NCBI RefSeq assembly: GCF_006345805.1
Contig: NC_043021.1
Span: 6,696,001 to 6,760,000 of the forward strand
From: Octopus sinensis
Lineage: Eukaryota
Direction: 5' to 3'
Length of the DNA: 64,000 nt
The position numbers and the translations under genes were made by a program. This document shows, piece after piece, positions 14,732-40,675 of this stretch (positions are counted from its first letter, which is position 1; each line of letters begins with the position of its first letter). The notes beneath the pieces were generated by a model. The model was not told the DNA's origin. It saw only the letters and a program-made list of their open reading frames with translations, and ran no database searches.

Positions 14732-15112
<381 letters not shown>

Positions 15113-15971: not shown

Positions 15972-16303
15972 GACTCCCTTAAGTCATGAATGACCATGGG
16001 ATTGCACTTAGAAAGTTACTCACTGAGGTACAAGTCTGGGCAAGGTTGTTTTCTGGAAGACCAGCAGTCGCCCATGCATGCCAGCCTCCTCTCCTCTCTC
16101 TGTGCCACTGATGTTATCCAAGGGAAAGGTGAGGGACAATACAGCTTGGCACCTGTGATGTCGCAACTCATTTCTACGGCTGAGTGAACCTGAGCAACTT
16201 GAAATAAAAAGTGTCTTGCTCGAGGAAACAACACACAGCCCAGTCCGCGAATTGAACTCACTACTTCATGATTGCGAGCCCGATGCTCTAACCACTGAGC
16301 CAT
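15972..16303 (-). mobile_element. tRNA-derived SINE family E (CORE-like body)
   Basis: Minus strand head atggctcagtggttagagc...gagttcaattc, followed by gtgttgtttcctcgagcaagacac; related copies at about 9375-9652 and 46880-47062. Confidence 0.8.
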
Positions 16304-16557
16304 AGTGAATTCAACAACAAATCAACTGAAGCAAAAAAAATGTCATGAAAAGCAGAGTGGAATGGGAACAGTGTCCTGCCCGTAGATCAAATGAAGGACT
16401 AGTTTTGAAATTACGAAACAGCTGAGTTCAACGCAGGGCGCACAAAGAAGGCTGGAGCATACAGTAATCAAAATGAAGATACCAGTCTGATTAATAATGC
16501 AAATAGTGTACATAATATTTATTCCTCATCTCAGAAGCATAGAATTGTGTTGTCCGC

Positions 16558-17081
16558 AAAACTGGTGTTGTCTTACAAACCAGTTTCAAGGCAGGGTTTT
16601 CTGTCAGTCACTGGCGGCTATTCTTGCACTCTCGGCCCCACGTTCTTAAATATGCTACCTTTTATATATACATACATACATACATATTGCTGAGTCTTCC
16701 TTACCCGGCTTCATATCAAGGCATCATTTCACTTTCATAGACAGACCATTGTGTTTCTACCAAGTTTAGGACAGAAAAGTAAATAAATATGTAGCGCATA
16801 ACAAATGATGGTAACTGTAAAAACTGGTGTTGTCTTACAAACCAGTTTCAAGGCAGGGTTTTCTGTCAGTCACTGGCGGCTATTCTTGCACTCTCGGCCC
16901 CACGTTCTTAAATATGCTACCTTTTATATATATATACATACATACATATTGCTGAGTCTTCCTTACCCGGCTTCATATCAAGGCATCATTTCACTTTCAT
17001 AGACAGACCATTGTGTTTCTACCAAGTTTAGGACAGAAAAGTAAATAAATATGTAGCGCATAACAAATGATGGTAACTGTA
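16558..17081. repeat. 262-bp head-to-tail tandem duplication
   Basis: Units 16558-16819 and 16820-17081 differ by a single C/T inside a TA/CATA microsatellite. Confidence 0.95.
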
Positions 17082-17696
17082 AATTGCATTCGAAGCAGTT
17101 TTTGAAATATTGATTTTTGCAACAGCAACAGCCATGATGACGATAACAATGACAGGAGCAGCAATATCTGTCAATATGTCACAGAAATTCACATTCAAAA
17201 ATCTCCAGCTTTGTATTTTTTAAACAGTGATCTTTAGTGTAAATTTTTGTCAGAATTTCTTTCTTGTTTCCTTACTTGATAATCTTATTATTTACTTTTC
17301 CCCGTTTTCCTTTTTTTAGTTCTTTTCCTGTTTTTTCTTTTCTTCTTTGTTTTCAGTTTCAGCTTTCAAAAATTATCTTAGAGATTAACCCTTTAGCATT
17401 TAACGGTCATATCTGGTCAAAATGTCCCACCTGTTTTATGCCCAAATTAGCCACATCTGGCCTCTCACACCGACCCTACAATATCATTTCTAAAGATTTA
17501 AGTTGCTTCATCAAAATCTCAAAAGCTACAAAATAAATTCAAAACATTTTGAATAAATAAACATTACATTTGACAAAATTATGTGAAAGCTAAAGGGTTA
17601 AGAAGTTGGGAAGATATGGGCGAAGTCTATTTTGTCCATTTGATTACGATTTTTGGTTCTATCTGATGGTCTGTGGCCATCCTAGGATTACCATCT

Positions 17697-17925
17697 TTAA
17701 CCCTTTAGCATTTAAACCGGCCATATCCGGCCAAAAATATTCTACCTGTTTTATGTTCAAACTGGCCAGATCTGGTCTCTCACACCAACCCTACAATATT
17801 GTTTTAAAAATTAACAGCTACCTCATCAAAATCTCATAGCTACAAGATAATGCCTGATTAGTTCAAAACAATGTGGATAAAAAAGGATTAATTTTGGCAG
17901 AATAATGCGAACACTAAAGGGTTAA
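17697..17925. mobile_element. piggyBac-type MITE family 1, intact example
   Basis: TTAA at both ends and perfect CCCTTTAG/CTAAAGGG TIRs; a sister copy lies 95 bp upstream (17385-17601). Confidence 0.88.
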
Positions 17926-18095
17926 ATCAACATGAAAGGACTTGTACCATTGTGTTGGCCCTTTTAAAAATATTTTAAACTGACTTAGCTTTCAGCTCTT
18001 CTGAATCTTAATGATACCATATGGCATTAGTTATCACTTAACTGTAGTGTTAAATGGATAAGGAGATAATTCGCCCTTGGACAGAAACACTAGAC

Positions 18096-18355
18096 TAGTG
18101 GGTCTCAACCATTTTTCCTTTATGGATCCCTTTGATTCCTATTTGACTTTGGTGGATCCTGCCCCGTTGCCTTTTGGTGTTTTTTAAAAAAAAAACTCAT
18201 ATATTTTACAATTAAATGTCATTAGGAATTTTATTTAAAAAATGTTAATGTTTTGTGAATTGTAGAAGTATAACAAATTTATTGCAGATAAATAACAAGA
18301 AAATCTTACATGGACCCCCACCAAGGGCCATATAGATCCTAGTTGAGAACCACTG
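18096..18355. mobile_element. hAT MITE
   Basis: TAGTGGGTCTCAACC...GTTGAGAACCACTG with exact 8-bp TSD CACTAGAC. Confidence 0.88.
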
Positions 18356-19929
18356 CACTAGACTTGTAGGAAGCCTTTCCCAAACTATTTGCTGAACTCT
18401 GCACTGCATTTCATTGTGTATTTGGGGAGTACACCATACTATGTGTTTGAAGAGTACACTAATTCATTGAGTATTTGGGTACTATAACAATCCAGTTCAC
18501 ATTACCTCTTTTAGTTGTTGGAAATGTGTACCTGATCTTCATCTGGAGAATGTTACCTTGGAAGGTAACTGGCACCCTATCCCATGGGAAATTTATATTC
18601 TATCTGCTTCATACCATAAAACTAAAGTCAAGTATCAGTCCCCAAAGATCCATTGGAATGTTTAAGGAAACATTTGAATTAGATTTACAATACAATAATT
18701 CATTAATATTAATCTCTCTTCAATTTAGAAAATGTATAACATTTAAATTAACTGCTAAGATTTTGATGTCCAAAGATAATGAGAGCCAACGTACTGGCCA
18801 ATTTATGTTGTGGAAATTAAATAGCGAAATTAAAAATAGCCAAAAGATTTTCTAGTTAATGGTAGGATGTAGTGCAAATTGTACCATGATTGCCCGACAA
18901 CCAATAGATATATGTTTTTAGTTTTTGTTAGAGGTCCTATAATATCTTTGTGAGAAGAAGAAAAGTTGTTTAATGACCTCTTTCAGAGTCTTTGAGACTG
19001 GCAAGAGAAAAGTGCCAGACTAAAGATCTGGCCTAAATACTTGCTACAGAGTGGAATTCATTAAGGCCATGCAAGGATCTAGTGGTAGTGTTAAGCTAGA
19101 AGATGGTTCAAGTCTCATCATCATAAATGAAATGGTCCTTTTAACAGGCTTCCTCACAGTTTTTGTTTATCAAATTTCACTTGGATAGCTTTGGCCTCCA
19201 ATAACAAGGCTGTGCTAGAAGATACTTTACTAAAAAGGTGCATCACAGTGGAACTGAACTTGAAGCCATATAGTTGCAAAGCAAATTCCTTAGAATCCAT
19301 TTCAACATATTACTACTGCTTGTTATTTTATCCATCCTACCAAAAGAGGAATGAAAGAAATCAAACTTCAACATGATTTGAACTCAGTGTGTGGTACACA
19401 GTACATTTCTGGTCAATTTCCAACCACCCACCTTTTTTTAAAAGAGAAAACGTACCACTGGCAGTGATGAGATTTACAATTGGTGCTTAGACGGTATAAT
19501 ATACTTGTTAGGTATGTATTAGTGATTGGCATTCCGTTAAGTTCCTAAAGGATAAACCTCCTTTCTCTCTGTGAAGTTTATACTTCAACTCTGTGTCAGT
19601 TTCTTTGATGTCCCCGCGTTTTAGCAAACCTTGGTTTCTGTCTTACAGCAACAACAACAACAACAACTGCAGTGACAACACTCTTAAGGGTTCTTCTACC
19701 ACTAAACGCCTGTTGAGCCGTTGATTAAGTTGGTTTGGGGGGAAACTCAGCTGCCAGGATCAATCATTAATCTCTCACTGACACACACACACATACAGCC
19801 ACACGCACGTAAACGGATGCATATACCTGTCCTTATAGGTTGCTGACTGGGAAAATCAATATTATTTGAGCTAATAATTCTAATGCCAGCCATAAAGAAT
19901 CTCATTTCCTTTTCACTGCCACACTCTTT

Positions 19930-20531
19930 CTTTCCTCTATTTATCTTTCTCTCCTCTCTTATTCCCTTACAAAACTCAAATCACTTTCCTTCTCTCCTCT
20001 CTCTCTCTCTCTCTCACCAACCCTCTCTCTTTCTTTCTCTTTTCTATCTCTTGCCAACCCTACTATCTCTTTCATTTTCTCCTCTGTCTCTCACCAACCT
20101 TATCTCTTTCTTTTTCTCCTGTTTCTCATGAACCCTATCTCTTTCCTTCCCTCCTATCTCTCACCAACCTTATCTCTTTCTTACTCTCCTTTGTCTCTCA
20201 CCAACCCTATCGCCATCTTTCTCTCCTCTCTATCTTCAGGTCTCTCCCCCATCTCTTTCTCTCCTTCATTTCTTTCTTTCTCTCCTTTGTCTCTCACCAG
20301 CCTTATCTCTTTCTTACTCTCCTTTGTCTTTCACCAACCCTATCTCCATCTTTCTCTCCTCTCTATCTTCAGGTCTCTCCCTCGTCTCTTTCTCTCCTTC
20401 ATCTCTTTCTTCCTCTCCTTTGTCTCTCCCCAACCTTATCTCTTTCTTACTCTCCTCTGTCTCTCCCCAACCCTATCTCCAACTTTCTCTCCTCTCTATC
20501 TTCAGGTCTCTCCCTCATCTCTTTCTCTCCT

Positions 20532-20567
<36 letters not shown>

Positions 20568-20570
20568 ATC
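19930..20570. repeat. CT-rich degenerate minisatellite (polypyrimidine tract)
   Basis: Recurring ctcctttgtctctcaccaacc(c/t)tatctct and ctctatcttcaggtctctccc units; a similar CT tract lies at about 2210-2600. Confidence 0.9.
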
Positions 20571-22667
20571 TGCTCATCTTGCACCAGCAGCTAAATAACT
20601 ATCAGTAATTTGTGCAGCATGTCAATAATTTGCCCTGTGTTCATTGGAATTTTAAACTATTATTGATCAAAGTGTACGTCAGAAACTAGTTGATTTTATG
20701 TAATATTCCAGTAAATGAATGATGTAAGGAGGTGGAAGAGGAGGATAATAAGAATAATAATGATGATGATGATAATAATAATAATAATAATGATGATGAT
20801 GATACATTTTCCTCCTTCAGTCGTTAATTTTTTTTATATTTATTGATCTTACCTAACTTGTTGATTTCTGCTTCAGCTGATTCAACTGTTAAAATAAAAA
20901 AAAATTCTTGCAGTAACTGATTGGTAGAATTTGATTCCAGTTTTTTTTCTTTTTTTTTAAATTTTTTTTTTTAGATTTAAAAAAAAAAAAATTTATTAAT
21001 AAGCTTGCTCATTATTTCTTGTTAAATAATCATTATCTTTAATGAATCCTAGCTCACAGTAGTAGCTGTAGTAATAGCAACTACTACTGCTACTAATACT
21101 AATAATAATAACAACAACAACAACAACATCATCAGTGGCATTTTAGATAAGATGAGGAAATAGCTGTGAGCCCTTGATAACTACATTGCAGTTGTTTATG
21201 AGCTAATAAGTGAGCCTGGATGTGATTGGTTGACCTGGTAAATAGGGTAGCCAAAATCTCCCACAAATCATACACCATGCAAAAGGAAAGGGCATTGGAT
21301 AATGTACTTACAGATATAATAGAATATGAGAGAGTCATGGTTGGAATGTCTTTGATCATTGGTTTGACTAGTTAGAGTTGCCTTCATGAAACTATGTCTC
21401 TTTTATTGAGACATAGTATATCTAGGACTATATTACAGTTTCGTATTGCAGTGTAGTGTTGTTGTTGTTGTTGTTGTTGAGCTTCAGGTTACAGATCAGC
21501 CATAATTCAACAGATTTACGATCAAAGCAACCCAACCATGACATTGACATTTTTTCCTTGACATAGTGTATCTCGGGATACATTATCCAATGTGCTGTTG
21601 CTTTGTATTAACCCTTTAGTGTTTAAACTGGCTTTATCCAGCCCAAATTTTCTATCTGTAATTCTGTTGAAATCAACCTGATTTGGCCTCTCACACCTAT
21701 TCTACAATGTCATTCTAAAATGTGTTTATTTATGTAAACACATTATTGAGATCTCGAAGCTACAATACAATTAACCTAATTGAAAACAATATAATTAAAT
21801 ATTATTGCTTTCGACAGAGGAATCTGAATGCTAAAGGGTTAAGGTGTGATGTGGAAATTTGGTTGCTATTTCTAGCATGTCAAGCAACTCAATAGAACCT
21901 TCATCAACGGCTAGTTATTATTATTATCTGTGAACTACTTCCTTAATTACCGCATTCAATATCTGAAGACTTCCTCTCTCTTTCCTTCATCAACGTCATT
22001 TTCCAAAAATGTATTTCCTACTGGAAGCAAACTCTGCACAAATCTTTGCTGCAAATGTTGTTTTTATTTGTTCCTTATTTGCCATTTTCTTTTAAAAACT
22101 CTGTAATGTGCCAAATGTTAATAAATAATCCTCGACACTTCAAATTCTGTGCTCATAGAGCAAGAAACAAAAAAAAAAAAACGAAAGTTTGGATAATCTC
22201 TAAGGAATTCTACATGTTTGAACAATATTATTGCATGCAAACACAGTTATAATATCTGGCAGTTGTTGCAGAATTATTGACTTTGGAATAATTTATTCAC
22301 ATGTGCATATGCACATGCATACACACACACACACACTTACATGCACACATTGTTTCACGTTCTATCTGTTTTTCTATGCTGGCAAAGTTTGAACAAATGT
22401 TTATTTACGGCAATGTTTTATGCCTGGATGCCTCTCCTGTCACCAATCCTCACCTGTCCTTTAAAAGCAAACGGTTTTCCTTTTATTGCACTAAACTTCA
22501 AAACCGCTGAGCTACAGGATGTAATCTCTACTGGGAAATGTAAACATGACAAAAATGGGTTTTTTTTTTGGCTCAGGTAGTTTCATGCAAAAAAAGTGGA
22601 AAAAATAGCTTTCCATGTGCACATACATACACACATACATTCATGCATATAAACATATATATATATA

Positions 22668-22832
22668 GGCGCAGGAGTGGCTGTGTGGTAAGTAGCTTGC
22701 TAACCAACCACATGGTTCCAGGTTCAGTCCCACTTGCTGGCATCTTGGGCAAGTGTCTTCTGCTATAGCCCCGAGCCGACCAATGCCTTGTGAGTGGATT
22801 TGGTAGACGGAAACTGAAAGAAGCCTGTCGTA

Positions 22833-22873
<41 letters not shown>

Positions 22874-23047
22874 TTGTCCCCCTAGCATTGCTTGACAACC
22901 GATGCTGGTGTGTTTACGTCCCCGTCACTTAGCGGTTCAGCAAAAGAGACCAATAGAATAAGTCCTGCGGTCGATTTGCTCGACTAAAGGCGGTGCTGCA
23001 GCATGGCCGCAGTCAAATGACTGAAACAAGTAAAAGAGTAAAGAGTA
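22668..23047 (+). mobile_element. SINE family A
   Basis: Full head and tail, inserted after (TA)n. Confidence 0.9.
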
Positions 23048-24570
23048 TATGCATACATACATATGCATGTATGTATGTATGTACACACAAGGCAGGCTTG
23101 AGGCTATTGTTGTAGACACTTAACCAAAGTACTGCACGGTCAGATTGAACCTGAAACCTTGGTTGTGAATCAAATTTCTTACATACATGCACACACACCA
23201 CACACACACGCATGCACAGGTGAGAGTTTAATTCTCTATATCATATTCCTTAACCCGAAAAGAAAAATGCTTCTTGCCTCTTTGCAACTTAAGCGTTTTA
23301 GTATTTCTTTTTCCTTCTTTGCGACCCAGATGCTTAAAATAATGAGAAAAATATAATAGCAAGCAGTGTCAATGAGTCGTCTTACTCAAGGTCAGCTCTG
23401 CTTGAGCAGATCCTCAACATAGACGTAGCAGCTGAACAGCTAAACCGTATGACTCATTTATCTGTTGTCACTTGACAGTCAAATTGTGCACACAAACATA
23501 CAATGATTTATGGTGTGATGTGATGGGGGTGCACTGTTGCTATTTGCCCAAGCCATACTCTTTCTCTCTCTACTTTTCAAACTGTTTCTATTTGCTTGTT
23601 GTTGTTGTTGTTGTTGTGAAGCCCTAGATGCCCTCATCAGCTGAGGACCTCATCGCAAACTCCAGTACGACATGGTCTAATAGGGAGAGGTTGCTCAGTT
23701 TTGCTGCCTTCAGTCTCTCATATTAAAACCTCTCTTACTTTGTCTTTTAACCACAGCAGCTGTCTGAATTGTTAATCATGCATTCCAATTCTTGCAGGTT
23801 CATTTGTAATTAATTAATTAAGAAGTCAGGTAACGAACGACAATAAATAATTGCATCTTAATTCTTTTCTTCTGATATTTCCTTCATTAAATCAGGTTTC
23901 AGAAACTTTATTAGCTAAATATTTCATCAATTAGAGAAGGAACTGACTGAAATCTGTCAAATCTGCCTTCATTTTATTGACTCCACAGAAAGTTCCATTT
24001 GCAAATTAACCAAAAGATTTCCTGTCAAGACGATGACTCAATAGGGTCCAACTGAAATAATATAGATGGTTGCTACTTAAATATGTTATTCCACCCTGTT
24101 CCTAACTTCTATCCACCTTCCCCTGAAATCCCACTAAGCCTCCCCTCCTCAATCTCGTCACTGTGCCACCCAAACCCCCCAATTTATCTACTTTGCAATT
24201 AACTAAATTGATAAATTTGAAGTATTATATCTTAACCTTTTGGTAGCAGCACGTACTTATTTTTTGTTTGTTTTTGTTTAAATATTTTCTTTTCCTTTCA
24301 CCCAAACAGAACAGCACTTTTTTTTTTTATGTTACGTTTTTTAAAATTCAATCTGCTTATAATTTTCAGAATGTTGTCTTCAGGTATTGTCATGGCAACA
24401 TCACCGAAACCTTATCCCTATCAGCCCCTGGTAGTTAGTGTGACAGATTAGCACTTGTCTACTCTCCCCATGTGCTTACAAAGATCTACCAACTGCTTGA
24501 ACCCCTATCACTACTACTTGCTTCGATTGTTGATTATTGATACATTACATTTGCAAGACTCAGATATTAC

Positions 24571-24604
<34 letters not shown>

Positions 24605-26160
24605 GTTATTGTTATTGTGGTGAGCTGCCAGAAACATTAGCAATGCTGGGCAAAGTGCTTTATAGCAGTTCATCTGTCTCCACACTCTGCATTCAAATTC
24701 CAGCGAGGTTGACTTTGCCTTTCATCTATTTAAATATTACGGGGTCAACGAAGAAATACCAGTTGAGCACTGAGGTTGATGTAGATAAATGGCCCCTTTC
24801 CTGAACTTGCTGGCCTTGTGCCAAAATTTGAAACCATTATTATTATTATTATTTGGGAAAATCAGTTGGCAGAATTAAAGTACTGGTGAAGGACTAGAGT
24901 CGATATTATTGACTGTTCTTTTCTCCCCCAAATTTTAGATTTTGCACCCGTGTTGCAGTTATTCCTTTGGGTTGATGGGCATTGATTTAAATTGTCCCTT
25001 GTCTTTTTGGGGTCAATAAAATAAAGCACCAGAAAAGCATTGGGTTCAGTGATATCAAATTACACCCTATTCTGCTTCAAAAAAAAAAAAAAAATATTCA
25101 AGCCTTGAGCATATGCTAGAAACAATGAGGCTAGCAGATTGGTGGAAATGTTAGTGCATATTGCAATATTGAGTTACGGTGCTTTATGTTCTGAGTTCAA
25201 ATCCCAATGAAGCCAACTTTGCCTTTCAACCTCACAGAGTCAAAATAAAAGTACCAGTCAAGTACTGAAATCAGTAATATTGACCAAACCCTACTTTTTA
25301 TATTTGCTGGCCTTGTTAAGATCTCCAATGGTTACAGGCTGATTTGTGGAGTTATACTGTAGTCGCATATTACCCTTATTTGCATTTTCTGACCTTAATG
25401 AGTCATGTAAGGAGTTAAAACTTATCTCTCATTGTCTAGTCGTTTCTTTGTGGTCGGGTTACATTATTGGACAACATCCCCAGCTTCTTTGGGGTTTTTA
25501 GAAGATAGAGAACCAGAAAGTTTGATGGGTGTTAATGGTGATAGACTTTGTCACTTAAACTCGGTGTTCTGAGATTTTTTTAACCTCAGTATCAGTGATA
25601 GGTACAGCTGTAGAAACCATGCTAAATCAGATTATAGCGTAGTGCAGCTCCCTGGCTTACCTGTTTTTAGTCAAACCGTCCAACCCATGCCAGCATGGAC
25701 ATTAAGTGATGATGATGATTTTAACGGACATTAAATAATGATAATGATGGTAATCTGGGGGAATGTAATAGCAACTTGGATGTCTTACCTTATGACATTG
25801 GAACCATAGCTAAGCACCACCCACCCCTTAGGACACTTCTATTAAATTAATTAATTTCTACAATTTGCTGACCTGTTTGCTTTTAAATGTAAATTTTTTC
25901 TTTTTAATCATTTAATCTTTTGTTATTTTTTTATGTCTTTCATTTATTCATGCTGTAACTTTGATTTTATTTCATTGACCAAGTAGTATTTCATTATGTC
26001 TGGATCTTCTTTGCATCAGATTGCTTCTGTGATGAGTTTGTGTTCAAACTGAAAACAAATGTGGATTGTTTGTATTGTTTTTTTTGTTTTTTTTACCTTC
26101 GCTCATATTTTCAGATATATATATATAAATATATAAGTTCAGCAAAAATTTAGATTCAAA

Positions 26161-26241
26161 TGGCTGATGAGTACTCAGCATTTTAAATCTGTTGTAATAC
26201 TTACAACATTTAATAAAATGATGTACGAAACGATCGTACCA
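26161..26241 (+). ncRNA. Type I hammerhead ribozyme motif with extended stem II, sense to HIPK
   Basis: UGG-CUGAUGA(26164-70)-GUAC...GUAC(26223-26)-GAAA-C-GAUC-GUA(26236-38)-CCA: complete consensus core; palindromic ACGAUCGU stem III. Confidence 0.72.
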
Positions 26242-27647
26242 AATTACCAGAGTCATTGTTCGTGGCCGTTTGCCAGCTCCGTCTGGCTCCTGTGCAGGTG
26301 GCACGTAAAAAGCACCCACTACACTCGCGGAGTGGTTGGCGTTAGGAAGGGCATCCAGCTGTAGAAACACTGCCAGATGGCTGCACCAAACTCCAATCTG
26401 ATCTGGCAGAGTTTCTACAGCTTGATGCCCTTCCTAATGCCAACCACTCCGAGAGTGTAGTGGGTGCTTTTTACGTGCCACCTGCATGGGGGCCAGTCAG
26501 GCGGTGCTGGCAATGACCTCGCTCGAATGGTGTTTTTTTATGTGCCACCTGCACATATATATAGGTTTTGCCCTGAATAACAATTAGGGCAAAACCTATA
26601 CTAAATATCAAGTGATATATGATGTCCTGTGTGGTAGCTTGAGCTGCTGGAAATGGCAGCTAAATTTCTCTAAAATCAGGTTTTCTTACCTTCATTATCA
26701 AAAATTCATTCAATCTTTAGTAAAGGATTCATCCTACAGAAAAAGAAAAAAAAAAAAAAAAACTTAGCTTAGCTCTTCAATTTTTTTCCCCAGTATTTAT
26801 TTTCTTAATATAAAAATAAAACTGATAGATAACAATCCTTCAAGATAGAAGTAACAAGTGTATAGAAAAGACTGTACTTTTCAAGGATGTTCTCTCCTCA
26901 AACTGCACCTTCCTTACTATATTCCATACCAACAAGCAAACACTTAAGAAAAATATTATTTAAAAAACCAAAAACAAAAAAACGTATTTCGTAGTTCTTC
27001 AAAGATGCTGAAAAAGTTTGTAGTTTTTCTTCAAAATATATCAGAAATTTCCATTGGTACTGTTCATACTTATTAATATATATGTCTAATCTAAAAATAT
27101 TTAAAATTTTAGTTTTCCTTGTTATGTCTGTTCATTTTATTCATTTGAAATTCATTTCAAACCCTGAACAAACCTCTTGTCATCTGTAATCAATAAATAA
27201 CCTCAACCATTTATCACGGGTGAACCAAAGACTCAGTCACCAGTTGGTGAAATGCTTTCCCTCTGTCTCAGCAACATTGGTGAGCAAACCTGTTAGTCAC
27301 TTGAGATTAATGAACTATGCTGCCAAGTTAGCTGTTCTGAGTCACCCCTCCCGACCTGTATAAATCCAGCTCTACCCTATAATGTTACAGATGTGGTGGG
27401 AAGCAGGTGGGGAGTTGAACAGCCAGAAAAATCAAAGATCAATGGTAGGAACTATAAAAGTGTCAGTGACATATTTATTGAGATGAATAGGAGGTGGGTG
27501 GCCATGCTGTATGGTAGGAGAGAAGTGCCATACTAGATGGGATGACAGAACTGATATATTACATATGCATACAATACACACACACACACACATATTTCTA
27601 GAAAGAGGGTAGTGGGATGTCATATATATATATATATATATATATAT

Positions 27648-27824
27648 AGGCGCAGGAGTGGCTGTGTGGTAAGTAGATTGCTTACCAACCACACGGTTCC
27701 GGGTTCAGTCCCACTGCATGGCACCTTGGGCAAGTGTCTTCTACTACAGCCTCGGGCCGACCAAAGCCTTGTGAGTGAATTTAGTAGACAGAAACTGAAA
27801 AGAAGCCCCGTTGTATATATGTGT

Positions 27825-27869
<45 letters not shown>

Positions 27870-28089
27870 CGTGTATGTTTGTGTGTCTGTGTTTGTCCCC
27901 CTAGCTTGACAACCGATGCTGGTGTGTTTATGTCCCCGTCACTTAGCAGTTCAGCAAAAGAGACCGATAGAATAAGTACTGGGCTTACAAAGAATAAGTC
28001 CTGGGGTCGAGATGCTCGACTAAAGGCGGTGCTCCAGCATGGCCGCAGTCAAATGACTGAAACAAGTAAGAGAGTATAAAAGAGTAAGA

Positions 28090-28090
<1 letters not shown>
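27648..28090 (+). mobile_element. SINE family A
   Basis: Full head and tail, inserted after (TA)n. Confidence 0.9.
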
Positions 28091-28123
<33 letters not shown>

Positions 28124-28513
28124 AGGGGTGGGGCTGGAGGGTTTGTGTTGTAAAGTGTCTGTAACATGTTGTAGACTTAAGCTGAAGTGAAGTGTCATTA
28201 TGCAGGTATATCATAATACGCATACATGCACACACTCAAGTACCTGCATACACTCACACTCTCATAACAAACAACACATATGCGCATAAAACTCAATCAC
28301 ACGCCCATTCACTCACTCATGCATGTAGCCATGCACATGTGAACCGGTGCGTGCACACACTCACAATTTACTTACTTAAAACTATTGTCATAGGTAATTC
28401 TCAATGTTTTCCATGTGAAAATTGGCAATTTTTATGAGCCAGTATTTATTTATTTATTTATAGTATCATTACGCTTTATAACAATGATGTTTTTTTTTTT
28501 GTTTTTTTTTTTG

Positions 28514-29028
28514 AAATCGAAACTCGGTGACCGGCATCCGTTGCTAGTGGAGTGCTAAGTGTACCATACGAGTGAGATCGTGCCAGAGCAACAAGCCGGC
28601 CTTCGTGCCAATGGCATGTTAAACACACCGTTCGAGCGTGATCATTACCGCGTCGCCTTACTAGCACTTGTGCTGGTGGCACGTGAAACATTTGAATGAG
28701 GTCGTCGCCAGTGCCACTGGACTGGCTCCTGTGCAGGTGGCACGTGAAAAGCACCATTTGGGCGTGGCCGTTGCCAGTACCACCAAACTGGCCCTCGTGC
28801 CGGTGGCACGTAAAAGCACCATCCATTCGTGGCCGTTCGCCAGCTCTGTCTGGCACCTGTGCAGGTGGCACGTAAAAAACACCCACTACACTCTCGGAGT
28901 GGTTGGCGTTAGGAAGGGCATCCAGTTGTAGAAACTCTGCCAGATCAGATTGGAGTCTGGTTCGCCAGACCTCAGTCAAATCGTCCAACCCATGCTAGCA
29001 TGGAAAGCGGACGTTAAATGATGATGAT
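28514..29028 (+). mobile_element. RTE 3'-UTR-derived copy with (GAT)n tail
   Basis: Homologous to 50720-51321, including gtggcacgtaaaaagcacc modules. Related copies lie at about 26258-26378(+), 26385-26555(-), 37523-37745(-), 42512-42869(+), 47230-47507(+), 51325-51600(+), 58230-58400(+), 59965-60137(+), 63560-64000(-). Confidence 0.85.
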
Positions 29029-30972
29029 TTAAAGAAATTCTTCAGTTTTTCATGTTGTTAAAAACAATAGAGTATGTTGTTAAAAACAATAGAGTTTTGG
29101 TTGCATAACCTGCACATATTAAATACTGAGTTATAATAGCTGCTTGCTATTTTGGTCGGCTCAGTGACACACACATAGCAAAGTTGTAAGAGTACCAGAC
29201 AGAATGCCTTGTGGTATTTGTTTCAACCCTTTGAAATTTACAAATATAATACACAAGGCTATTTCTTTCTCACACCTCTCCTTCCTCCCCCTCTCTCTCT
29301 CTCTCTCAATCAGCTTCAGGAAGGGGTCAAAAGAAGAACATAATTGTGCCCCCCCCCCTCTCACCTTCCATGTTTGCACTGCAAGAAAGGAGCTGGTTAG
29401 CTGTCTGGGTGCAGACCAAATAATTGTCTGATTAGTCACGAGTCTGCTTCAGGTTACTGAGAGGACTGTATAACAATTTGGGCAAAACCTATACTAAATA
29501 TCAAGTGATATATGATGTCCTGTGTGGTAGCTTGAGCTGCTGGAAATGGCAGCTAAATTTCTCTAAAATCAAGTTTTCTTACCTTCAGTAAGGAAGAAAA
29601 ATCTGGACATTGCAGTCCTAGATATACAACACTGTGGATCTTTTACAGCTTGAATGCCTCGAGCCTGTTTTCTTTCGGTAGTTGCTGTGGTGAAAGAAGT
29701 AGTATGGAAGATGAGAGTGAAAGGAATTGCAACAGGCATGTTTATCTCCAGTCTCGAGAGCTAATCAACTTTTTCGTTTTCCACATGAAACAGAAAATAA
29801 GGCTGGAGAAGAAATGCCTGTCGCAAAGTGTTTCGTAAAAGATGGAAGTCTATAGCAAGTATGTTGCGAGTGAAAGAACCTGTTTAATCGAGAATGTAAA
29901 AAAGGATAAAGCAAAGTCTTCAGTGTGAGTATGTGGTTTGTGGGGGTCAATCGCCCCCCCCCCGCTTCATTTTTTGTTAATCACTCATTCTTATTTAATT
30001 GTATATATTTTAATTGTTTGTTTATTCATACGGTGTCTCATTCGATACCCTGACCCCAACATTTGTTTTGTCTGTCCCCCTATTGTCCCCTCTTTTTCTC
30101 AACATTATGGTGAATAAAGAAATACTCTCTCTCTCTCTCTGACCCCAATGTTTGTTTTGTCTTTTCCCCACCCCCGTATTGTCCCCTCTTTTTCTCAACC
30201 TTATGGTGAATAAAGAAATACTCTCTCTCTTCCCTTTCACTTTCTCTCTCTCTCATATCACCAGGACATTACTTGCTTATTCTATCAATACATTTACAGT
30301 CAATCTGCCAAAGTTTCTTTCTGCTAATTCTCATTCTTCCACTTGATGCTGTTCTATCCTTTAAAAAAAAGTAGTTCTACTCAAGTGGTTTCTTTCCTCA
30401 ATGTCTATCACACGGAGCTCTCTCCTTTCTCATTTCCCCAGATAAATATATATAAAATCTGAATTCTTTCAAATCTTGCACTGTCTGTTTTATGATTCTT
30501 AGAGTAGGTTCTTGTCAGATGTTTTTTCTCTCCTTTTCCTTTTGTAATTCCTAACATACTGAGTAGTTGCTTGAGGCCTGCTTTATTGTTGGTATCTTGT
30601 GACCCTGTTAAGAGTGACTTTGAATGCAAAAATAAAAGTAATAGTCTCTAGTTGATGTTGTCTGGAGTAATAACCATTATAGTTCTACAGTAGAAGAAAT
30701 GTAGACTATACAACATCCAAGAATTTTTTTTAGCAGTTGTCATCACATTGTTACACAGCATCAGATCTTTTTTCCTGATCTTTTAATATTTCATTCTGAA
30801 TTACTTGTATGTTTTGAAGTGCAGTTTAACCCCTTCACGTTTCAACTGGCCATATCCGACCAAAATATTCTACCTGTGTTACGTTACGTTACGTTATGTT
30901 ATGTTCAAAGTAGCCGGATCAAGCCTTTCACACCTGCCCTACAATATCGTTAAAAAAAACATACGATCATAT

Positions 30973-31395
30973 AGGCGCAGGAGTGGCTGTGTGCTAAGTA
31001 GTTTGCTTACCGACCACATGGCTCTGGGTTCAGTCCCACTGTGTTGCACCTTGGGCAAGTGTCTTCTGCTATAGCCTTGGGCCGACCAAAGCCTTGTGAG
31101 TGGATTTGGTAGACGGAAACTGAAAGAAGCCCGTCGTGTGTATATATATATATATGTATGTATGTATGTCTGTATGTATGTGTGTGTGTCTGTGTTTGTC
31201 CCCCCACCATCGCTTGACAACCGATGTTGGTGTGTTCATGTCCTCATAACTTAGCGGTTTGGCAAAAGAGACCGATAGAATAAGTACTAGGCTTACAAAG
31301 AACAAGCTCCTGGGGTCGATTTGTTCGACTAAAGGCGGTGCTCCAGCATGGCCACAGTCAATTGACCGAAGCAAGCAAAAGAATAAAGGAATAAA
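30973..31395 (+). mobile_element. SINE family A nested in a TTAA MITE
   Basis: MITE 5' half at 30826-30970; MITE 3' half resumes at about 31398. Confidence 0.88.
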
Positions 31396-31983
31396 GAATA
31401 TCATCAAAATCTCAAGGTCATGAAATGGTAAATGATTAGTTGAAAATAATGTGATTTAAAGTAGGCATAATCTGAACAGTAAAGAACTGCACACAATTTG
31501 TCTGATGTAAATCTAGTAATAGATAAAATCATGACCATTATTTGTTTATTCACAATTTGTGCTGTAAACTCTGTACTATATATCTTGTCCAATTAATATC
31601 GCAGTCGAAAAATTCATCGGTGCCCTACCTCTTGGCCGGCTAGTACAATAAAGACCTCCATCTGCAGATTAAAGCATGTCATAACTAGTTTTTACGTTGT
31701 ACAAACAGTTGTTCAAAGCTGTTGCTTTGTTGGCAATCATCTAAGGAGGTCTGGTTGATTGTGTATCTGTTATTCTTGGGTAGGAGGGGCAATCAGATAT
31801 TTACCCTGGTTGTTGCTATAGATATACAACAAACAGTTTTGTTACGAACCAACAAAGAATGCCTCTATGTGGCACAGCCTGCTGGAAATAGCAACTGAAT
31901 CTTTCTGAAATTACATCCTACTATTTTTGGAAGGGAAGGGCAACTCTAGATTGTGAAAAAGTTGCTTAAATAAGACGTAATAA

Positions 31984-32388
31984 GGCGCAGGAGTGGCTGT
32001 GTGGTAAGTAGCTTGTTTACCAACCACATGGTTCCGGGTTCAGTCCCACTGCGTGGCACCTTGGGCAAGTGTCTTCTACTATAGCCTCGGGCCGACCAAA
32101 GCCTTGTGAGTGGATTTGGTAGACGGAAACTGAAAGAAGCCCGTTGTATATATGTATATATATATATGCGTGTGTGTGTTTGTGTGTCTGTGTTTGTCCC
32201 CCTAGCATTGCTTGACAACCGATGCTGGTGTGTTTATGTCCCCGTTACTTAGTGGTTCGGCAAAAGAGACCGATAGAATAAGTACTGGGCTTACAAAAGA
32301 ATAAGTCCCGGGGTCGAGTTGCTCGACTAAAGGCGGTGCTCCAGCATGGCCGCAGTCAAATGACTGAAACAAGTAAAAGAGTAAAGAG
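31984..32388 (+). mobile_element. SINE family A
   Basis: Full head and tail. Confidence 0.9.
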
Positions 32389-32993
32389 AGATTAATCGCC
32401 ACAGATGGATCAGAGGTGGTAATAGCTTTGCTCAAACAGGGCTGACCTGTGGTTAAACAGCAATAAAATTTTGGTAGGAAATGTTAGACTTTAGTTGTTA
32501 CTACTGGTCTCCTACATTAATAACACTAAATTGAAACCGAGGAGAGCAACATCCTTAATGGATGGCACTCGGATCACATATTTATTGCTTGCTGACAACT
32601 GAGTCACCAGTTATTTCTCTACAGAGGCAGTTGCCATTCCATCTTCTCAAGTTAGCCTCTATAAATTGTGATCTTCAGAATTTCTTCAGTCATTTTAGTG
32701 TTAACAAGATAGGTTATTTTACAAATGTGTTACATTTATAAAGTGTCCCAGTTTGGTTTGAAGTTTTGCAACAGGAAATTATGAACGAACCAACTGTTGC
32801 TGCTAGTAGTTAATTCATTTAGTTATGTTTCTCGAGTGAAGTATATAGCTTCATAAATTATATAAAATGTATTTGGTGAGAAAATAGAGCTAGTTTTGTA
32901 GATTAAAATATGTATATTTTAGATATGAATATGTAACTTCAACCAAATGTGTTGACTGCTACTCTCTTTCTTTCTCTCTCTTTCTCCCCTTTC

Positions 32994-33041
<48 letters not shown>

Positions 33042-33863
33042 TTAGAGATAAAACCACTATTAGGCAAATCAAACAGTGAAAAACATAAACCAAAACATAG
33101 AAATAAATTAATTAATATAATATATAAAATATAAAATTCAAAATTTAAATTATTTAAATTTAAAGTTAAGATTAAAAAAAAATTTTTTTAATTATTAATT
33201 TATACTGTAAAATTAGATTTAATCCTAAATCTAATTTTTCCCTGTAAGTTTGGATTTACTCCCTAATATTATTATTAGGGCACAGATAGTGTGTCTATAG
33301 CCAGCTGGAAGAGATATCTTCCTGGGGCTACAAACTACAGTAGCATCCACCCTTAGGGGTTAGCCATATTCAAATGGCAAATATGCGTCACGATATTATT
33401 ATTATTATTATTATATATATATATATGTTTGTGTGTGTGTATGTTACACATGTATGTATAACATCCACTTTTCCGTTTTCGCATAGCACCAATGGAATTT
33501 TTCGGGACAGATGTTTTATGGGTGTTTGTTCTTCCTGTTGCCAGCCCTCACCTCTTTCCGAGTTAGGTAATATTTTCCGTGGCCAGGCATCTTTTCATGG
33601 AAAATTAAATGACACTGCTGTTTGATGGTGACGCTCATTTACAATTCTCACAGTGTGAAGACAGGGAGACACATGCACTGCTTGCACATATATATATATA
33701 TACATACATGTATATGTGTGTGTGTATACATATGTATATATATATATATATATATGCCAGAATGGAGAGCAGACGTTAAATGATGATATGTATATATATA
33801 TATTATATATATATATATATATATAACACATATGTATACACATATATATGTGTGTGTGTATAC

Positions 33864-33925
<62 letters not shown>

Positions 33926-33964
33926 TCATCATTTAAAGTCTGCTCTCCATTCTGGCATGCGTAT

Positions 33965-34310
33965 TACTCTTTTACTCATTTCAGTCCTTAGACTGCGGCC
34001 ATGCTGGAGCACCGCCTTTAGTCGAGCAAATCGACCCCGGGACTTATTCTTTGTAAGCCCAGTACCGGTCTCTTTTGCCGAACTGCTAAGTGACAGCGAC
34101 GTAAACACACCAGCATCGGTTGTCAAGCACACACACACACACACACACATATATAGGACAGGGTTCTTTCAGTTTCTCTCTACCAAATCCACTCCCAAGG
34201 GTTTGCTTGGCCTGAGGCTGTATATTGTATTAGGCATTTGCCTGAGGTGCCGCACAGTGGGACTGAACCCTGGATCATGTGGTTGGGAAGCAGGTTTCTT
34301 AACCACACAT
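33965..34310 (-). mobile_element. SINE family A (chimeric, older head)
   Basis: Reverse complement of family A. Confidence 0.82.
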
Positions 34311-34544
34311 CCACATCATATACATATATGTATATATGTTTTCTCAGAAACAGAGTTAGCAATTACAAACTTCAAGAAAGTATGCAAGCTATCGAAGATG
34401 TTCCATGAGATGCTGGGGAAATAATTTCCTTGGTCCTAGAGTCTCCTGATGAAATGGGATAAGGAGCTGGAGTTTTCCTTGTCCCCCCCCCCCCATTTGA
34501 AAGAGGACGTGTGCTGCCTAAGTCTTTTCGTATTCACAAACATA

Positions 34545-34713
34545 CGCAGGAGTGGCTGTGTGGTAAGTAGCTTGCTAACCAACCACATGGTTCCGGGTTC
34601 AGTCCCACTGTATGGCATCTTGGGCAAGTGTCTTCTGCTACAGCTTTGGGCCGACCAATGCCTTGTGAGTGGATTTGGTAGACGGAAACTGAAAGAAGCC
34701 TGTCGTATATATG

Positions 34714-34746
<33 letters not shown>

Positions 34747-34942
34747 ATGTGTTTGTGTGTCTGTGTTTGTCTCCCTGGTGTGTTTACGTCCCCGTCGCTT
34801 AGCGGTTCGGCAAAAGAGACCGATAGAATAAGTACTGGGCTTACAAAGAATAAGTCCCGGGGTCGATTTGCTCGACTAAAAGGCGGTGCTCCAGCATGGC
34901 CGCAGTCAAATGCCTGAAACAAGTATAAGAGAGTAAAGAGAG
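34545..34942 (+). mobile_element. SINE family A
   Basis: Full head and tail, small internal deletion. Confidence 0.9.
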
Positions 34943-35334
34943 GAATACATACACCCCATAGACTAAGTCACACGTCCCACCTGCTGAATCCCATTCACAA
35001 GGTATTGGTCTCTCTCTTAAGCTACAGTAGAAGACACTTGCTTAACTCTTTGTCATTTAAACTGGCCATATCCAGCCCAAATATCCTACCTATTGAATGT
35101 TCTAAGTGGCTAGATCTGGCCTTTCACACTTACCTTATAATATCACTCTAAAAATAAGCAGTCTTGTCATCGAAATCTCAAAGCTACGAGATAATCTATG
35201 ATTAATTCAAAACAATGTGAATAAATAAGCATTACATTTGACTGAGTAATCTGAACGCTAAGGAGTTAAGGGGTTGTGAATTGGGTTTGAACCTGGAATA
35301 ATGCATTGCAAACTCATTTTCGGAACCATACATT

Positions 35335-35559
35335 TACTCTTTTTACTCTTTTACTTGTTTCAGTCATTTGACTGCGGCCATGCTGGAGCACCGCCTTTAA
35401 TTGAGCAACTCGACCCCGGGACTTATTCTTTTGTAAACCCAGTACTTATTCTATCAGTCTCTTTTGCTGAACCGCTAAGTTACGGGGAACGTAAACACAC
35501 CAGCATCGATCGTCAAGCAATGCTAGGGGGACAAACACAGACACACAAACACACACACG

Positions 35560-35607
<48 letters not shown>

Positions 35608-35767
35608 TACGACGGGCTTCTTTCAGTTTCCGTCTACCAAATCCACTCACAAGGCATTGGTCGGCCCGAGGCTATAGTAGAAGTCACTTGCCCAAGGTGC
35701 CACGCAGTGGGACTGAACCCGGAACCATGTGGTTGGTAGACAAGCTACTTACCACAAGCCACTCCTG
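35335..35767 (-). mobile_element. SINE family A
   Basis: Reverse complement, full length. Confidence 0.9.
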
Positions 35768-35956
35768 CATGCATGAATGTTTTTAAACATTCTCCTCTTC
35801 GACATTCGTATATAAGTACTTTGCGTTTGCTGATACTCTACAGTGGTGAGGCCACTGCCCATATATCCTTTTCCACTTCATTAAGACTTAGTATCCATTT
35901 GTACTCAATTCAAAATACACTAAAAAACCTGCTTTACTCCTGTTTATATATGTATG

Positions 35957-36011
<55 letters not shown>

Positions 36012-39120: not shown

Positions 39121-39154
39121 TCTTCTTTGGTGCCATGACCAGTATTATTATTAA

Positions 39155-40671: not shown

Positions 40672-40675
40672 GTGT

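What the first reader, a model, noticed from the sequence alone, without database searches (positions are those of the whole stretch)
26161..26241. Sense-strand hammerhead with a perfect core inside the 30.8-kb kinase-domain intron
Seen: stem I UGG/CCA, CUGAUGA, stem II GUAC/GUAC extended into a ~55-nt rod (CAUUUUA/UAAAAUG and UGUUGUAA/UUACAACA), GAAAC, GAUC loop and GUA, predicting cleavage 3' of 26238. A competing local hairpin GCUGA(26163-67)/UCAGC(26175-79) would sequester the core. Inference: activity would be switch-like and need dimerisation through the 8-nt palindrome ACGAUCGU; if active it would cut nascent HIPK pre-mRNA.
Basis: partly seen in the sequence, partly recalled or inferred. 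Interest (0 to 1): 0.8.

Follow-up and report, generated by a model that had tools for sequence, protein, structure and literature searches.

The report
Lone hammerhead-like motif in HIPK intron
A single sequence with the exact catalytic core of a hammerhead self-cutting RNA does sit in a 30.8-kb intron of an HIPK-like kinase gene, but it fails the curated family threshold, has no partner copy and is predicted to fold otherwise, so it is most likely a dead or crippled leftover, not a working switch.

Summary

The motif has all conserved hammerhead core bases. It also has hallmarks of animal type-I hammerheads: the G10.1-C11.1 pair and a 2-bp helix III with a palindromic tetraloop.

Against a working ribozyme:
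- Rfam Hammerhead_1 scores 13.8 bits against a 34-bit threshold.
- Helix I has 3 bp where about 6 is usual.
- A 48-nt hairpin replaces the short loop 2.
- Two local hairpins cover both halves of the core with probability about 0.95.

Chance is not excluded. A relaxed descriptor hits 0.6-0.9% of such windows, or hundreds of sites per genome. A hallmark-strict descriptor is expected about 0.15 times per 2.7-Gb genome.

No cephalopod genome could be reached, so copy number and orthologue conservation are untested.

My reading is a solitary, diverged derivative of a mobile-element type-I hammerhead that is inactive or nearly so (about 0.5). Coincidence is about 0.35. A working cutter of HIPK pre-mRNA is about 0.07. 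Interest is low to moderate.

The parts
26153..26157 (+). Possible distal extension of helix I (GAUUC), pairing with GAGUC 26250-54 across a 3x8 internal loop. In the MFE fold this helix instead stacks on UGG 26161-63 paired with the second CCA at 26247-49.
   Evidence: chance-level complementarity
26161..26163 (+). Helix I, 3' strand (UGG)
26164..26170 (+). Core box CUGAUGA (C3-A9)
26171..26174 (+). Helix II, 5' strand GUAC (G10.1 is 26171)
26175..26222 (+). 48-nt insert in place of loop 2. It folds as a rod: 26179-85/26214-20 (7 bp) and 26190-97/26201-08 (8 bp, UAC loop).
   Evidence: -10.2 kcal/mol; 18% of 50-nt windows in the same intron fold at least as well
26223..26226 (+). Helix II, 3' strand GUAC (C11.1 is 26226)
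26227..26230 (+). Core GAAA (G12, A13, A14, A15.1)
26230..26237 (+). Helix III: A15.1-U16.1 and C15.2-G16.2 closing the tetraloop GAUC. Together these form the 8-nt palindrome ACGAUCGU, which holds 2 of the 3 CpGs clustered at 26226-36.
26238..26238 (+). A17. The predicted scissile bond lies between 26238 and 26239.
   Evidence: hammerhead numbering rule applied
26239..26241 (+). Helix I, 5' strand (CCA)
26163..26179 (+). Competing hairpin 1, GCUGA/UCAGC, which sequesters C3-A6. It overlaps the 10-nt palindrome UGAGUACUCA at 26167-76.
   Evidence: pair probability 0.95
26223..26239 (+). Competing hairpin 2, GUACGA/UCGUAC, which sequesters G12, A13, helix III and the cleavage site
   Evidence: pair probability 0.97
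14843..45607 (+). Host intron (30,765 nt, GT..AG, phase 0) of the HIPK-like gene. The motif lies 11.3 kb from the 5' splice site.
26115..26136 (.). (TA)n-type microsatellite ending 25 nt upstream of the motif
26259..26762 (+). Unrelated repeat that abuts the motif's 3' side. It consists of foldback/tandem GGTGGCACGTAAAAAGCACC units, a segment 97% identical to 29466-29590, and an A-rich end. Homology to other copies begins at about 26259, so the motif is not part of this repeat.

Best explanation
This is a solitary, diverged derivative of the animal type-I hammerhead, the kind carried by retrozyme, satellite or Penelope-like mobile repeats. It now lies as a fragment of about 100 nt in unique AT-rich intron DNA, between a (TA)n microsatellite and a later retroposon insertion. 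It keeps the catalytic core, the base of helix II and the short palindromic helix III. Loop 2 has been replaced by a 48-nt hairpin, and helix I is reduced to 3 bp. In the HIPK pre-mRNA, both halves of the core are predicted to be locked in two small local hairpins, and there is no second copy to build a double hammerhead. I therefore expect it to cut very slowly or not at all, and to have no role in HIPK expression. Shown here: the anatomy, the context, the absence of a partner copy, the sub-threshold family score and the competing folds. Inferred: the mobile-element origin and the lack of activity.
For: The core and all hallmark positions are present. The Rfam alignment shows likeness to the family beyond the core: GAGU-C...G-ACGAAACG--CGU. 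Helix II differs from the consensus by a compensated pair (C-G to A-U), and loop 3 stays palindromic. PMC4209133 names G10.1-C11.1 and a palindromic helix III/loop 3 as features that argue against random origin. PMC7229834 describes a 2-bp helix III plus tetraloop as the invertebrate form. With those hallmarks the chance expectation is 3.6e-6 per window, or about 0.15 per 2.7-Gb genome, and none of 2,519 decoys gave a strict hit. Cephalopod genomes do carry the family: 235 Hammerhead_1 loci were reported in the giant squid (PMC6962438). The motif has three CpGs in 11 nt, inside an intron with CpG o/e 0.43 and a 29% GC flank. My reading of the cluster positions against the repeats, tRNA and exons seen in other calls is that most other such clusters in the window lie in those features, which hints at a young, inserted origin. 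Penelope-like elements show an insertion bias for microsatellites, (TA)n in the Naiad clade, and are often truncated to solitary motifs. For inactivity: Rfam gives 13.8 vs 34 bits. The hammerhead fold lies 5.7-8.8 kcal/mol above the MFE, with an ensemble fraction of 2e-6 to 4e-8 and hammerhead helix probabilities below 0.001. The double hammerhead is 6.8 kcal/mol worse than the best dimer. No second copy was found.
Against: No other copy of this sequence, no family consensus and no orthologue could be examined, so the mobile-element origin is an inference from probabilities only. Neutral decay would not be expected to spare all 27 core, helix II and helix III positions while eroding helix I and adding a neat hairpin. 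Flanking DNA shows no recognisable element ends, and the ORFs tested within 3 kb of the motif gave no protein-domain match (one search lists the nearby reading frames). The motif meets neither the tandem-repeat criterion of retrozymes nor the architecture of Penelope minimal hammerheads. The folding argument is weak on its own: the Rfam consensus hammerhead also gets only about 1e-4 of the ensemble in the same model, because nearest-neighbour energies ignore the tertiary contacts of the core.
Confidence: 0.5

Rival explanations
1. It is pure coincidence. An AT-rich intron rich in small palindromes (GUAC three times, UGAGUACUCA, ACGAUCGU) happens to spell the two hammerhead boxes at a workable distance. 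There is no evolutionary link to ribozymes and no activity.
For: The relaxed descriptor is expected 0.007-0.009 times per window, which is hundreds of sites per genome, and 0.016-0.044 times per window in shuffles. The Infernal score is ordinary, about 0.13 expected per window for this model alone. Helix II rests on the self-complementary tetramer GUAC, which occurs three times in 70 nt. The rod is unremarkable: 18% of intron windows fold as well. A loosened pattern search in metagenomes returned only three hits, all in 62-70% GC contigs and none with a hammerhead helix II or helix I, close to my own rough expectation for chance matches. PMC6155905 warns that motif-only hammerhead calls were mostly false positives. 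The first-stage reader had many windows in which to find such a motif.
Against: Counting the literature hallmarks (G10.1-C11.1, Watson-Crick 15.2-16.2, palindromic tetraloop), the expectation falls to 3.6e-6 per window and 0.15 per genome, and 0 of 2,519 decoys reach it. The CpG-rich ACGAUCGU box matches the family consensus ACGcgCGU at its outer six positions in CpG-depleted DNA.
Confidence: 0.35
2. It is a working, host-retained intronic hammerhead. It would act either as a monomer helped by tertiary contacts that the folding model cannot see, between the internal loop of helix II and the looped extension of helix I, or as a transient dimer. It would cut nascent HIPK pre-mRNA in a regulated way.
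For: The core is perfect, with a cleavable GUA triplet. It lies on the sense strand of an intron, like the amniote intronic hammerheads (PMC6155905). Newt type-I hammerheads can cleave as monomers when helix I has an internally looped extension matched to loop 2, and a 3 bp + internal loop + 5 bp helix I can be drawn here. Retention of three CpGs could reflect constraint. Nearest-neighbour folding also under-predicts the canonical hammerhead.
Against: The score is below the Rfam threshold by 20 bits. Helix I has 3 bp. Loop 2 is replaced, so the known loop-loop contacts cannot be assumed. Both competing hairpins form from neighbouring bases as soon as they are transcribed, with probability about 0.95. 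There is no partner in cis, and pairing between two separate single-copy nuclear transcripts through 8 bp is implausible. The double hammerhead is not the best dimer. There is no conservation evidence at all. From my own knowledge (Dye, Gromak and Proudfoot 2006), a hammerhead cut inside an intron need not prevent splicing, so even activity would not imply regulation.
Confidence: 0.07
3. It belongs functionally to the adjacent retroposon (26259-26762). The hammerhead would trim read-through intron transcripts to release the element's 5' end, as HDV-like ribozymes do for R2 and RTE elements.
For: The predicted cut lies only 20 nt upstream of where homology to other copies of the repeat begins. 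The element ends in an A-rich tract.
Against: Other copies in the window carry further repeat units upstream of the equivalent point and nothing like the hammerhead. A type-I hammerhead stays on the upstream cleavage product, so new insertions could not inherit it. The homology boundary (about 26259) does not coincide with the cut (26238/26239).
Confidence: 0.03

Closest known systems
Canonical metazoan type-I hammerhead of non-LTR retrozymes and satellite repeats (Schistosoma Sm-alpha, newt satellite 2, mussel and coral retrozymes; Rfam RF00163)
   Same: Type-I topology and all core bases. G10.1-C11.1 with a 4-bp helix II base. A15.1-U16.1 plus one more pair capped by a palindromic tetraloop, which PMC7229834 calls the invertebrate form. 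AT-rich setting. Weak helix III, which in newts is compensated by double-hammerhead formation.
   Different: Loop 2 (about 6 nt, with conserved contact bases) is replaced by a 48-nt hairpin. Helix I has 3 bp instead of about 6. It is a single copy, not a tandem repeat of about 170-400 bp. It scores 13.8 bits against a 34-bit gathering score.
Minimal hammerheads of Penelope-like elements (Cervera and de la Pena 2014, PMC4209133)
   Same: Type I, with short helix I (4-5 bp) and enlarged helix II. Thought to work only as dimers, with low activity in vitro. Mostly found as solitary motifs from truncated elements. Penelope-like elements favour microsatellite targets, and a (TA)n tract lies 25 nt upstream here. 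Arkhipova et al. 2021 also record split cores 35-50 nt apart in Naiad elements.
   Different: Those motifs usually lack helix III and loop 3, and carry an unpaired base between A9 and 10.1. They sit in pseudo-LTRs beside an RT/GIY-YIG ORF. None of this is seen here.
Amniote intronic hammerheads HH9 (RECK) and HH10 (CTCL), Rfam RF02275 and RF02277
   Same: A type-I hammerhead on the sense strand inside an intron of a protein-coding gene, thought to be domesticated from retroelement hammerheads (PMC6155905).
   Different: Those are conserved across birds and mammals and have canonical helices and loop contacts. Here no conservation data exist, the structure deviates, and no Rfam hammerhead family other than Hammerhead_1 was reported at E<=10.

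Membership tests
Hammerhead ribozyme, type I (Rfam RF00163, clan CL00010) | Conserved core: C3 U4 G5 A6 N7 G8 A9, G12 A13 A14, A15.1-U16.1 pair, H17 not G | tested here: met
   CUGAUGA 26164-70, GAAA 26227-30, U 26237, A 26238
Hammerhead ribozyme, type I (Rfam RF00163, clan CL00010) | Helix II of at least 4 bp, starting with G10.1-C11.1 | tested here: met
   GUAC 26171-74 / GUAC 26223-26. Predicted pair probability is only 0.001.
Hammerhead ribozyme, type I (Rfam RF00163, clan CL00010) | Short helix III (1-2 bp) with a small palindromic loop, the animal type-I form (PMC4209133, PMC7229834) | tested here: met
   A-U and C-G closing GAUC, forming the palindrome ACGAUCGU at 26230-37
Hammerhead ribozyme, type I (Rfam RF00163, clan CL00010) | Helix I of about 6 bp (4-5 bp in minimal forms) | tested here: not met
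   Only UGG/CCA (3 bp), then A.A mismatches. The Rfam alignment shows deletions and mismatches in helix I.
Hammerhead ribozyme, type I (Rfam RF00163, clan CL00010) | Short loop 2 (about 6 nt in the Rfam consensus) with bases that contact helix I / loop 1 | tested here: not met
   A 48-nt insert takes the place of the 6-nt loop. Whether its internal loop could substitute cannot be judged by sequence.
Hammerhead ribozyme, type I (Rfam RF00163, clan CL00010) | Score at or above the curated gathering threshold (34 bits) | tested here: not met
   No hit at gathering. Not listed at E<=10 in 1.2 kb. 13.8 bits and E 0.85 in a 103-nt search.
Hammerhead ribozyme, type I (Rfam RF00163, clan CL00010) | Site-specific self-cleavage after H17 | not testable with these tools
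   Needs in vitro transcription or RNA-end mapping.
Hammerhead ribozyme, type I (Rfam RF00163, clan CL00010) | Homologous copies with conserved core and covarying helices | not testable with these tools
   No cephalopod DNA was reachable. The ORF look-up and homology search found nothing. The HIPK search returned no hit above 90% identity. Metagenome patterns gave 0 and 3 hits, none hammerhead-like.
Metazoan non-LTR retrozyme | Tandem repeats of about 170-400 bp, each with a type-I hammerhead | tested here: not met
   One motif in 64 kb, with no self-similarity of the flanks. The UGAUGAG...GAAA stretch 135 nt upstream is not a hammerhead.
Metazoan non-LTR retrozyme | Expression as small linear and circular RNAs | not testable with these tools
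   No transcriptome data.
Penelope-like element minimal hammerhead | No helix III or loop 3; helix II of 6-8 bp with an unpaired base after A9 | tested here: not met
   Helix III and loop 3 are present, and G10.1 directly follows A9.
Penelope-like element minimal hammerhead | Location in a pseudo-LTR next to an RT / GIY-YIG ORF, or membership of a consensus family of truncated copies | tested here: inconclusive
   The five ORFs tested within 3 kb of the motif gave no Pfam match, and I saw nothing resembling a reverse transcriptase when reading the stop-free frames of 20-32.5 kb by eye. A severely truncated copy would leave no ORF, and family membership needs the genome.
Domesticated intronic hammerhead (HH9/HH10 type) | Sense-strand position in an intron of a protein-coding gene | tested here: met
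   Intron 14843-45607 of the HIPK-like gene, + strand
Domesticated intronic hammerhead (HH9/HH10 type) | Conservation at the orthologous position across species | not testable with these tools
   See above; no related genome available.

The most novel reading that the evidence does not exclude
An octopod-specific, host-retained type-I hammerhead with an expanded helix II self-cleaves the HIPK pre-mRNA inside its largest kinase-domain intron. It would toggle between the two locking hairpins and the active fold. That would make it an invertebrate counterpart of the amniote intronic hammerheads.
Probability: 0.04. Interest if true: 0.65.

Novelty: new member of a known kind. Interest (0 to 1): 0.27.

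Why it matters
If it were active and conserved, it would extend host-gene intronic hammerheads, so far documented in amniotes, to a mollusc. It would also provide a natural example of a ribozyme gated by alternative hairpins in a gene for a signalling kinase. As the evidence stands, the value is mainly cautionary. A perfect hammerhead core plus three drawable stems is expected hundreds of times per large genome. Only family hallmarks, copy families, conservation or cleavage data can tell a ribozyme from a look-alike. The locus would also make a convenient test of how much helix I and loop 2 erosion a type-I hammerhead tolerates.

Tried and rejected
1. Rfam over the whole window at gathering thresholds found only a tRNA. 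At E<=10 over 1.2 kb there was no hammerhead. Only a 103-nt search exposed the weak Hammerhead_1 match.

2. I looked for a second copy or repeat family in the window with the repeat finder, BLAST at word size 7 and mismatch-tolerant pattern searches. None was found.

3. I tested whether the motif belongs to the adjoining repeat. It does not: homology to other copies starts at about 26259, and other copies carry more repeat units upstream instead.

4. I tried to reach orthologous DNA through the minus-strand ORF that overlaps the motif. The exact look-up and the homology search both found nothing.

5. I tried to reach cephalopod HIPK loci through the exons. No hit exceeded 90% identity and none was named as a cephalopod, so there was no usable locus.

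6. I ran two metagenome pattern scans. The close pattern found nothing. The loosened pattern found three hits in 62-70% GC contigs, none hammerhead-like.

7. No supplementary files were held as text for the two Penelope-element papers I queried for cephalopod or mollusc hammerhead sequences.

8. A hammerhead-like shadow 135 nt upstream (UGAUGAG, a 5-bp hairpin, then UGAAAAC at 26027-56) raised the idea of a decayed tandem partner. I rejected it: C3 is replaced by G, there are extra bases, U16.1 is missing and Rfam reports no hammerhead there.

9. The thermodynamic argument is kept only as supporting evidence, because the canonical consensus also scores poorly in the same model.

I used individual ORFs and a list of stop-free frames instead.

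Full report
**1. What is in the sequence**

- UGG 26161-63.
- CUGAUGA 26164-70.
- GUAC 26171-74.
- A 48-nt insert at 26175-26222. It forms two stacked helices: CAUUUUA 26179-85 with UAAAAUG 26214-20, and UGUUGUAA 26190-97 with UUACAACA 26201-08.
- GUAC 26223-26.
- GAAA 26227-30.
- C-GAUC-G-U at 26231-37.
- A 26238.
- CCA 26239-41.

In hammerhead numbering this is a type-I arrangement. All core bases are present, along with G10.1-C11.1, A15.1-U16.1, C15.2-G16.2 and a GUA cleavage triplet. The scissile bond falls between 26238 and 26239. The 8-nt palindrome ACGAUCGU (26230-37) and the competing hairpin GCUGA/UCAGC are real.

One is a second competing hairpin, GUACGA 26223-28 / UCGUAC 26234-39. 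The other is the 10-nt palindrome UGAGUACUCA at 26167-76.

**2. Context**

The + strand carries exons of an HIPK-like kinase.
- One exon ends at 14842 (...NCLDDMAQ).
- The next starts at 45608 (INVPQDLEG...).
- The intron between them runs 14843-45607. It is 30,765 nt long, has GT..AG ends and is in phase 0.
- The exon peptides match proteins named homeodomain-interacting protein kinase at 60-72% identity over nearly the whole query.
- The downstream exon matches the last 30 positions of Pfam Pkinase.

Locally, the motif lies in 29-31% GC DNA that has no other copy in the window.
- A (TA)n microsatellite at about 26115-36 ends 25 nt upstream.
- An unrelated repeat begins at about 26259. It consists of foldback/tandem GGTGGCACGTAAAAAGCACC units, a segment 97% identical to 29466-29590, and an A-rich end near 26762.
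- Other copies of that repeat have further units upstream of the equivalent point and nothing like the hammerhead.

**3. Is it more than chance?**

A permissive type-I descriptor requires CUGANGA, helix II of at least 3 bp, GAAA within about 100 nt, helix III of at least 1 bp plus A-U, UH, and helix I of at least 3 bp. It finds only this site on either strand of the window.

| Null model | Expected hits per 64-kb window |
|---|---|
| 1,000 dinucleotide shuffles, permissive descriptor | 0.044 |
| Same shuffles, helix II at least 4 bp | 0.016 |
| 2,519 decoy descriptors (the two core boxes permuted), run on the real window | 0.0067 per decoy (17 hits in total; 15 decoys with a hit) |
| Same decoys, hallmark-strict version | 0 hits |
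| Factorised estimate from real sub-motif frequencies, relaxed | 0.009 (about 365 per 2.7-Gb genome) |
| Factorised estimate, strict | 3.6e-6 (about 0.15 per genome) |

The strict version requires G10.1-C11.1, a Watson-Crick 15.2-16.2 pair and a palindromic tetraloop.

Infernal is less impressed. Hammerhead_1 scores 13.8 bits against a gathering score of 34. The E-value of 0.85 covers 103 nt times 4,227 families, which I rescale to about 0.13 per window for this one model. Much of the shortfall appears to come from the 48-nt insert and the failed helix I.

The same alignment shows family likeness beyond the core. The pattern GAGU-C...G-ACGAAACG--CGU is shared. The helix II difference from the consensus is compensated (C-G to A-U). 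Loop 3 keeps its palindromy.

Cervera and de la Pena (PMC4209133) name G10.1-C11.1 and the palindromic 15.2-16.2/loop 3 as traits that argue against a random origin. PMC7229834 describes a 2-bp helix III with a tetraloop as the invertebrate form.

The motif also holds three CpGs within 11 nt, in an intron whose CpG o/e is 0.43. My reading of the positions against the repeats, tRNA and exons seen in other calls is that most other such clusters in the window fall in those features. That hints at young, inserted DNA.

The giant squid genome was reported to contain 235 Hammerhead_1 loci (PMC6962438), so the family does exist in cephalopods.

Taken together, I consider descent from a real type-I hammerhead somewhat more likely than coincidence. 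This weighing rests on rough priors of my own, not on a test.

**4. Would it work?**

Four points argue that it would not.

a. *Helix I.* It has 3 bp, where canonical type-I motifs have about 6 and minimal ones 4-5. A distal 5-bp helix (26153-57/26250-54) can be drawn across a 3x8 internal loop. That much complementarity is at chance level, and the MFE fold uses it with a different CCA (26247-49).

b. *Loop 2.* Its bases make the contacts needed for activity at cellular Mg2+. Here it is replaced by a rod that is itself ordinary: 18% of 50-nt windows in this intron fold as well.

c. *Predicted folding.* The hammerhead fold lies 5.7 kcal/mol above the MFE in a 93-nt context and 8.8 kcal/mol above it in a 107-nt context. 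The ensemble fractions are 2e-6 and 4e-8. The three hammerhead helices have pair probabilities of 0.0001-0.001. The two locking hairpins have probabilities of 0.95 and 0.97. Both hairpins form from adjacent bases, so they should form as soon as they are transcribed. This evidence is only supporting. The Rfam consensus hammerhead also gets just about 1e-4 in the same model, because nearest-neighbour energies ignore the tertiary structure of the core. That consensus does at least keep helices I and II in its MFE.

d. *The dimer route.* A double hammerhead built on the ACGAUCGU duplex scores -40.2 kcal/mol, against -36.8 for two monomers. The best dimer scores -47.0 and uses the UGAGUACUCA palindrome instead. 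More importantly, double hammerheads form between tandem copies in one RNA. There is no second copy in the 64 kb, which includes the whole intron.

A stretch 135 nt upstream (26027-56: UGAUGAG, a 5-bp hairpin, then UGAAAAC) looks faintly similar. It has G in place of C3, extra bases and no U16.1, and Rfam reports no hammerhead there.

**5. What it most likely is**

- Best reading (about 0.5): a solitary, diverged derivative of a mobile-element type-I hammerhead, now inactive or nearly so. It may be the 3'-terminal remnant of a truncated Penelope-like or retrozyme-type insertion. Penelope-like elements favour microsatellite targets, are often reduced to single motifs, and can show split cores 35-50 nt apart.
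- Coincidence (about 0.35).
- A working cutter of HIPK pre-mRNA (about 0.07).
- A processing signal for the neighbouring retroposon (about 0.03). This is unlikely because the ribozyme would stay on the upstream fragment, and the homology boundary does not match the cut.

**6. What could not be done**

No cephalopod genome is reachable with these tools.
- The exact look-up for the minus-strand ORF over the motif found nothing, and a homology search with the part of that ORF covering the motif also found nothing.
- The HIPK exon search returned nothing above 90% identity and no cephalopod locus.
- A close metagenome pattern found nothing. A loosened one found three hits in 62-70% GC contigs, none with a hammerhead helix II or helix I.
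- No supplementary files were held as text for the two Penelope-element papers I queried for cephalopod or mollusc hammerhead sequences.

Copy number, family consensus and orthologue conservation are the decisive computations, and all remain open.

**7. Comparison with known systems and verdict**

In design the motif most resembles the canonical animal type-I hammerhead of retrozymes and satellites.

It cannot be filed as a member of RF00163. Three defining features were tested and not met: the gathering score, the helix I length and the short loop 2.

It shares the sense-strand intronic position with the amniote HH9/HH10 ribozymes, but not their defining conservation, which is untested here.

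If it is real, it is one more member of a known kind, with an unusual helix II. Nothing about it is categorically new.

Interest is 0.27. The most novel reading still open is a conserved, hairpin-gated intronic hammerhead in octopod HIPK. I give that about 0.04 probability, and it would deserve about 0.65 interest if true.

Noticed in passing
window 26027-26056 (+): UCUGUGAUGAG-UUUG-UGUU-CAAA-CUGAAAAC combines a C-box-like UGAUGA, a 5-bp hairpin and a CUGA/GAAA stretch, 135 nt upstream of the motif. It looks faintly like a broken hammerhead or a C/D-box pair. Rfam gives only sub-threshold snoRNA matches (at most 13 bits) and no hammerhead.
   Followed up: partly
window 26270-26513 (also 28476-28988, 37536-37687, 42383-42826, 50866-51510, 63657-63971): A family of foldback/tandem repeats is built from units of about 40 nt containing GGTGGCACGTAAAAAGCACC. 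The copy next to the motif forms a long hairpin that matches the mir-449 model at 37.8 bits (threshold 60.4). This is probably a repeat-derived hairpin and not a conserved microRNA.
   Followed up: partly
window 6233-6306 (+): An intact-looking tRNA-Gly(UCC) gene (Rfam 57.6 bits; also called by ARAGORN) lies inside the HIPK-like gene region, on the sense strand.
   Followed up: no
window 4553-4984, 13904-14426, 22649-23053, 27630-28089, 30955-31398, 31965-32396, 34524-34946, 43689-44139, 48831-49253, 61280-61687 and inverted copies at 3644-3877, 35338-35756: There are at least a dozen copies of an interspersed repeat of about 450 nt. It has a B-box-like GGTTC(C/A)GGTTCAGTCCCACTG head and an internal (TA)n/(TG)n microsatellite. 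It is probably a tRNA-derived SINE and it dominates the intron.
   Followed up: no
window 53819-54133 (+): A stop-free 105-aa frame (…LEKRRRHGDLI…RGHSEKLYLRRFHLSRRRGAFSVRVADPWNKLP…) has no Pfam match. From memory it resembles the conserved C-terminal tail of invertebrate non-LTR retrotransposon ORF2 proteins. This was not tested.
   Followed up: partly
whole window; intron 14843-45607: CpG is strongly depleted (o/e 0.41 in the window and 0.43 in the intron). Clusters of three CpGs within 12 nt appear to fall mainly in repeats, the tRNA gene and exons. That would be consistent with historical gene-body methylation and with repeats being younger than the surrounding intron.
   Followed up: partly
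window 20000-20600 (+): A CT-rich tandem array with a period of about 35-37 nt (and a higher-order 96/133-nt spacing) reads as long open frames in several phases. It is low-complexity satellite and not coding sequence.
   Followed up: no
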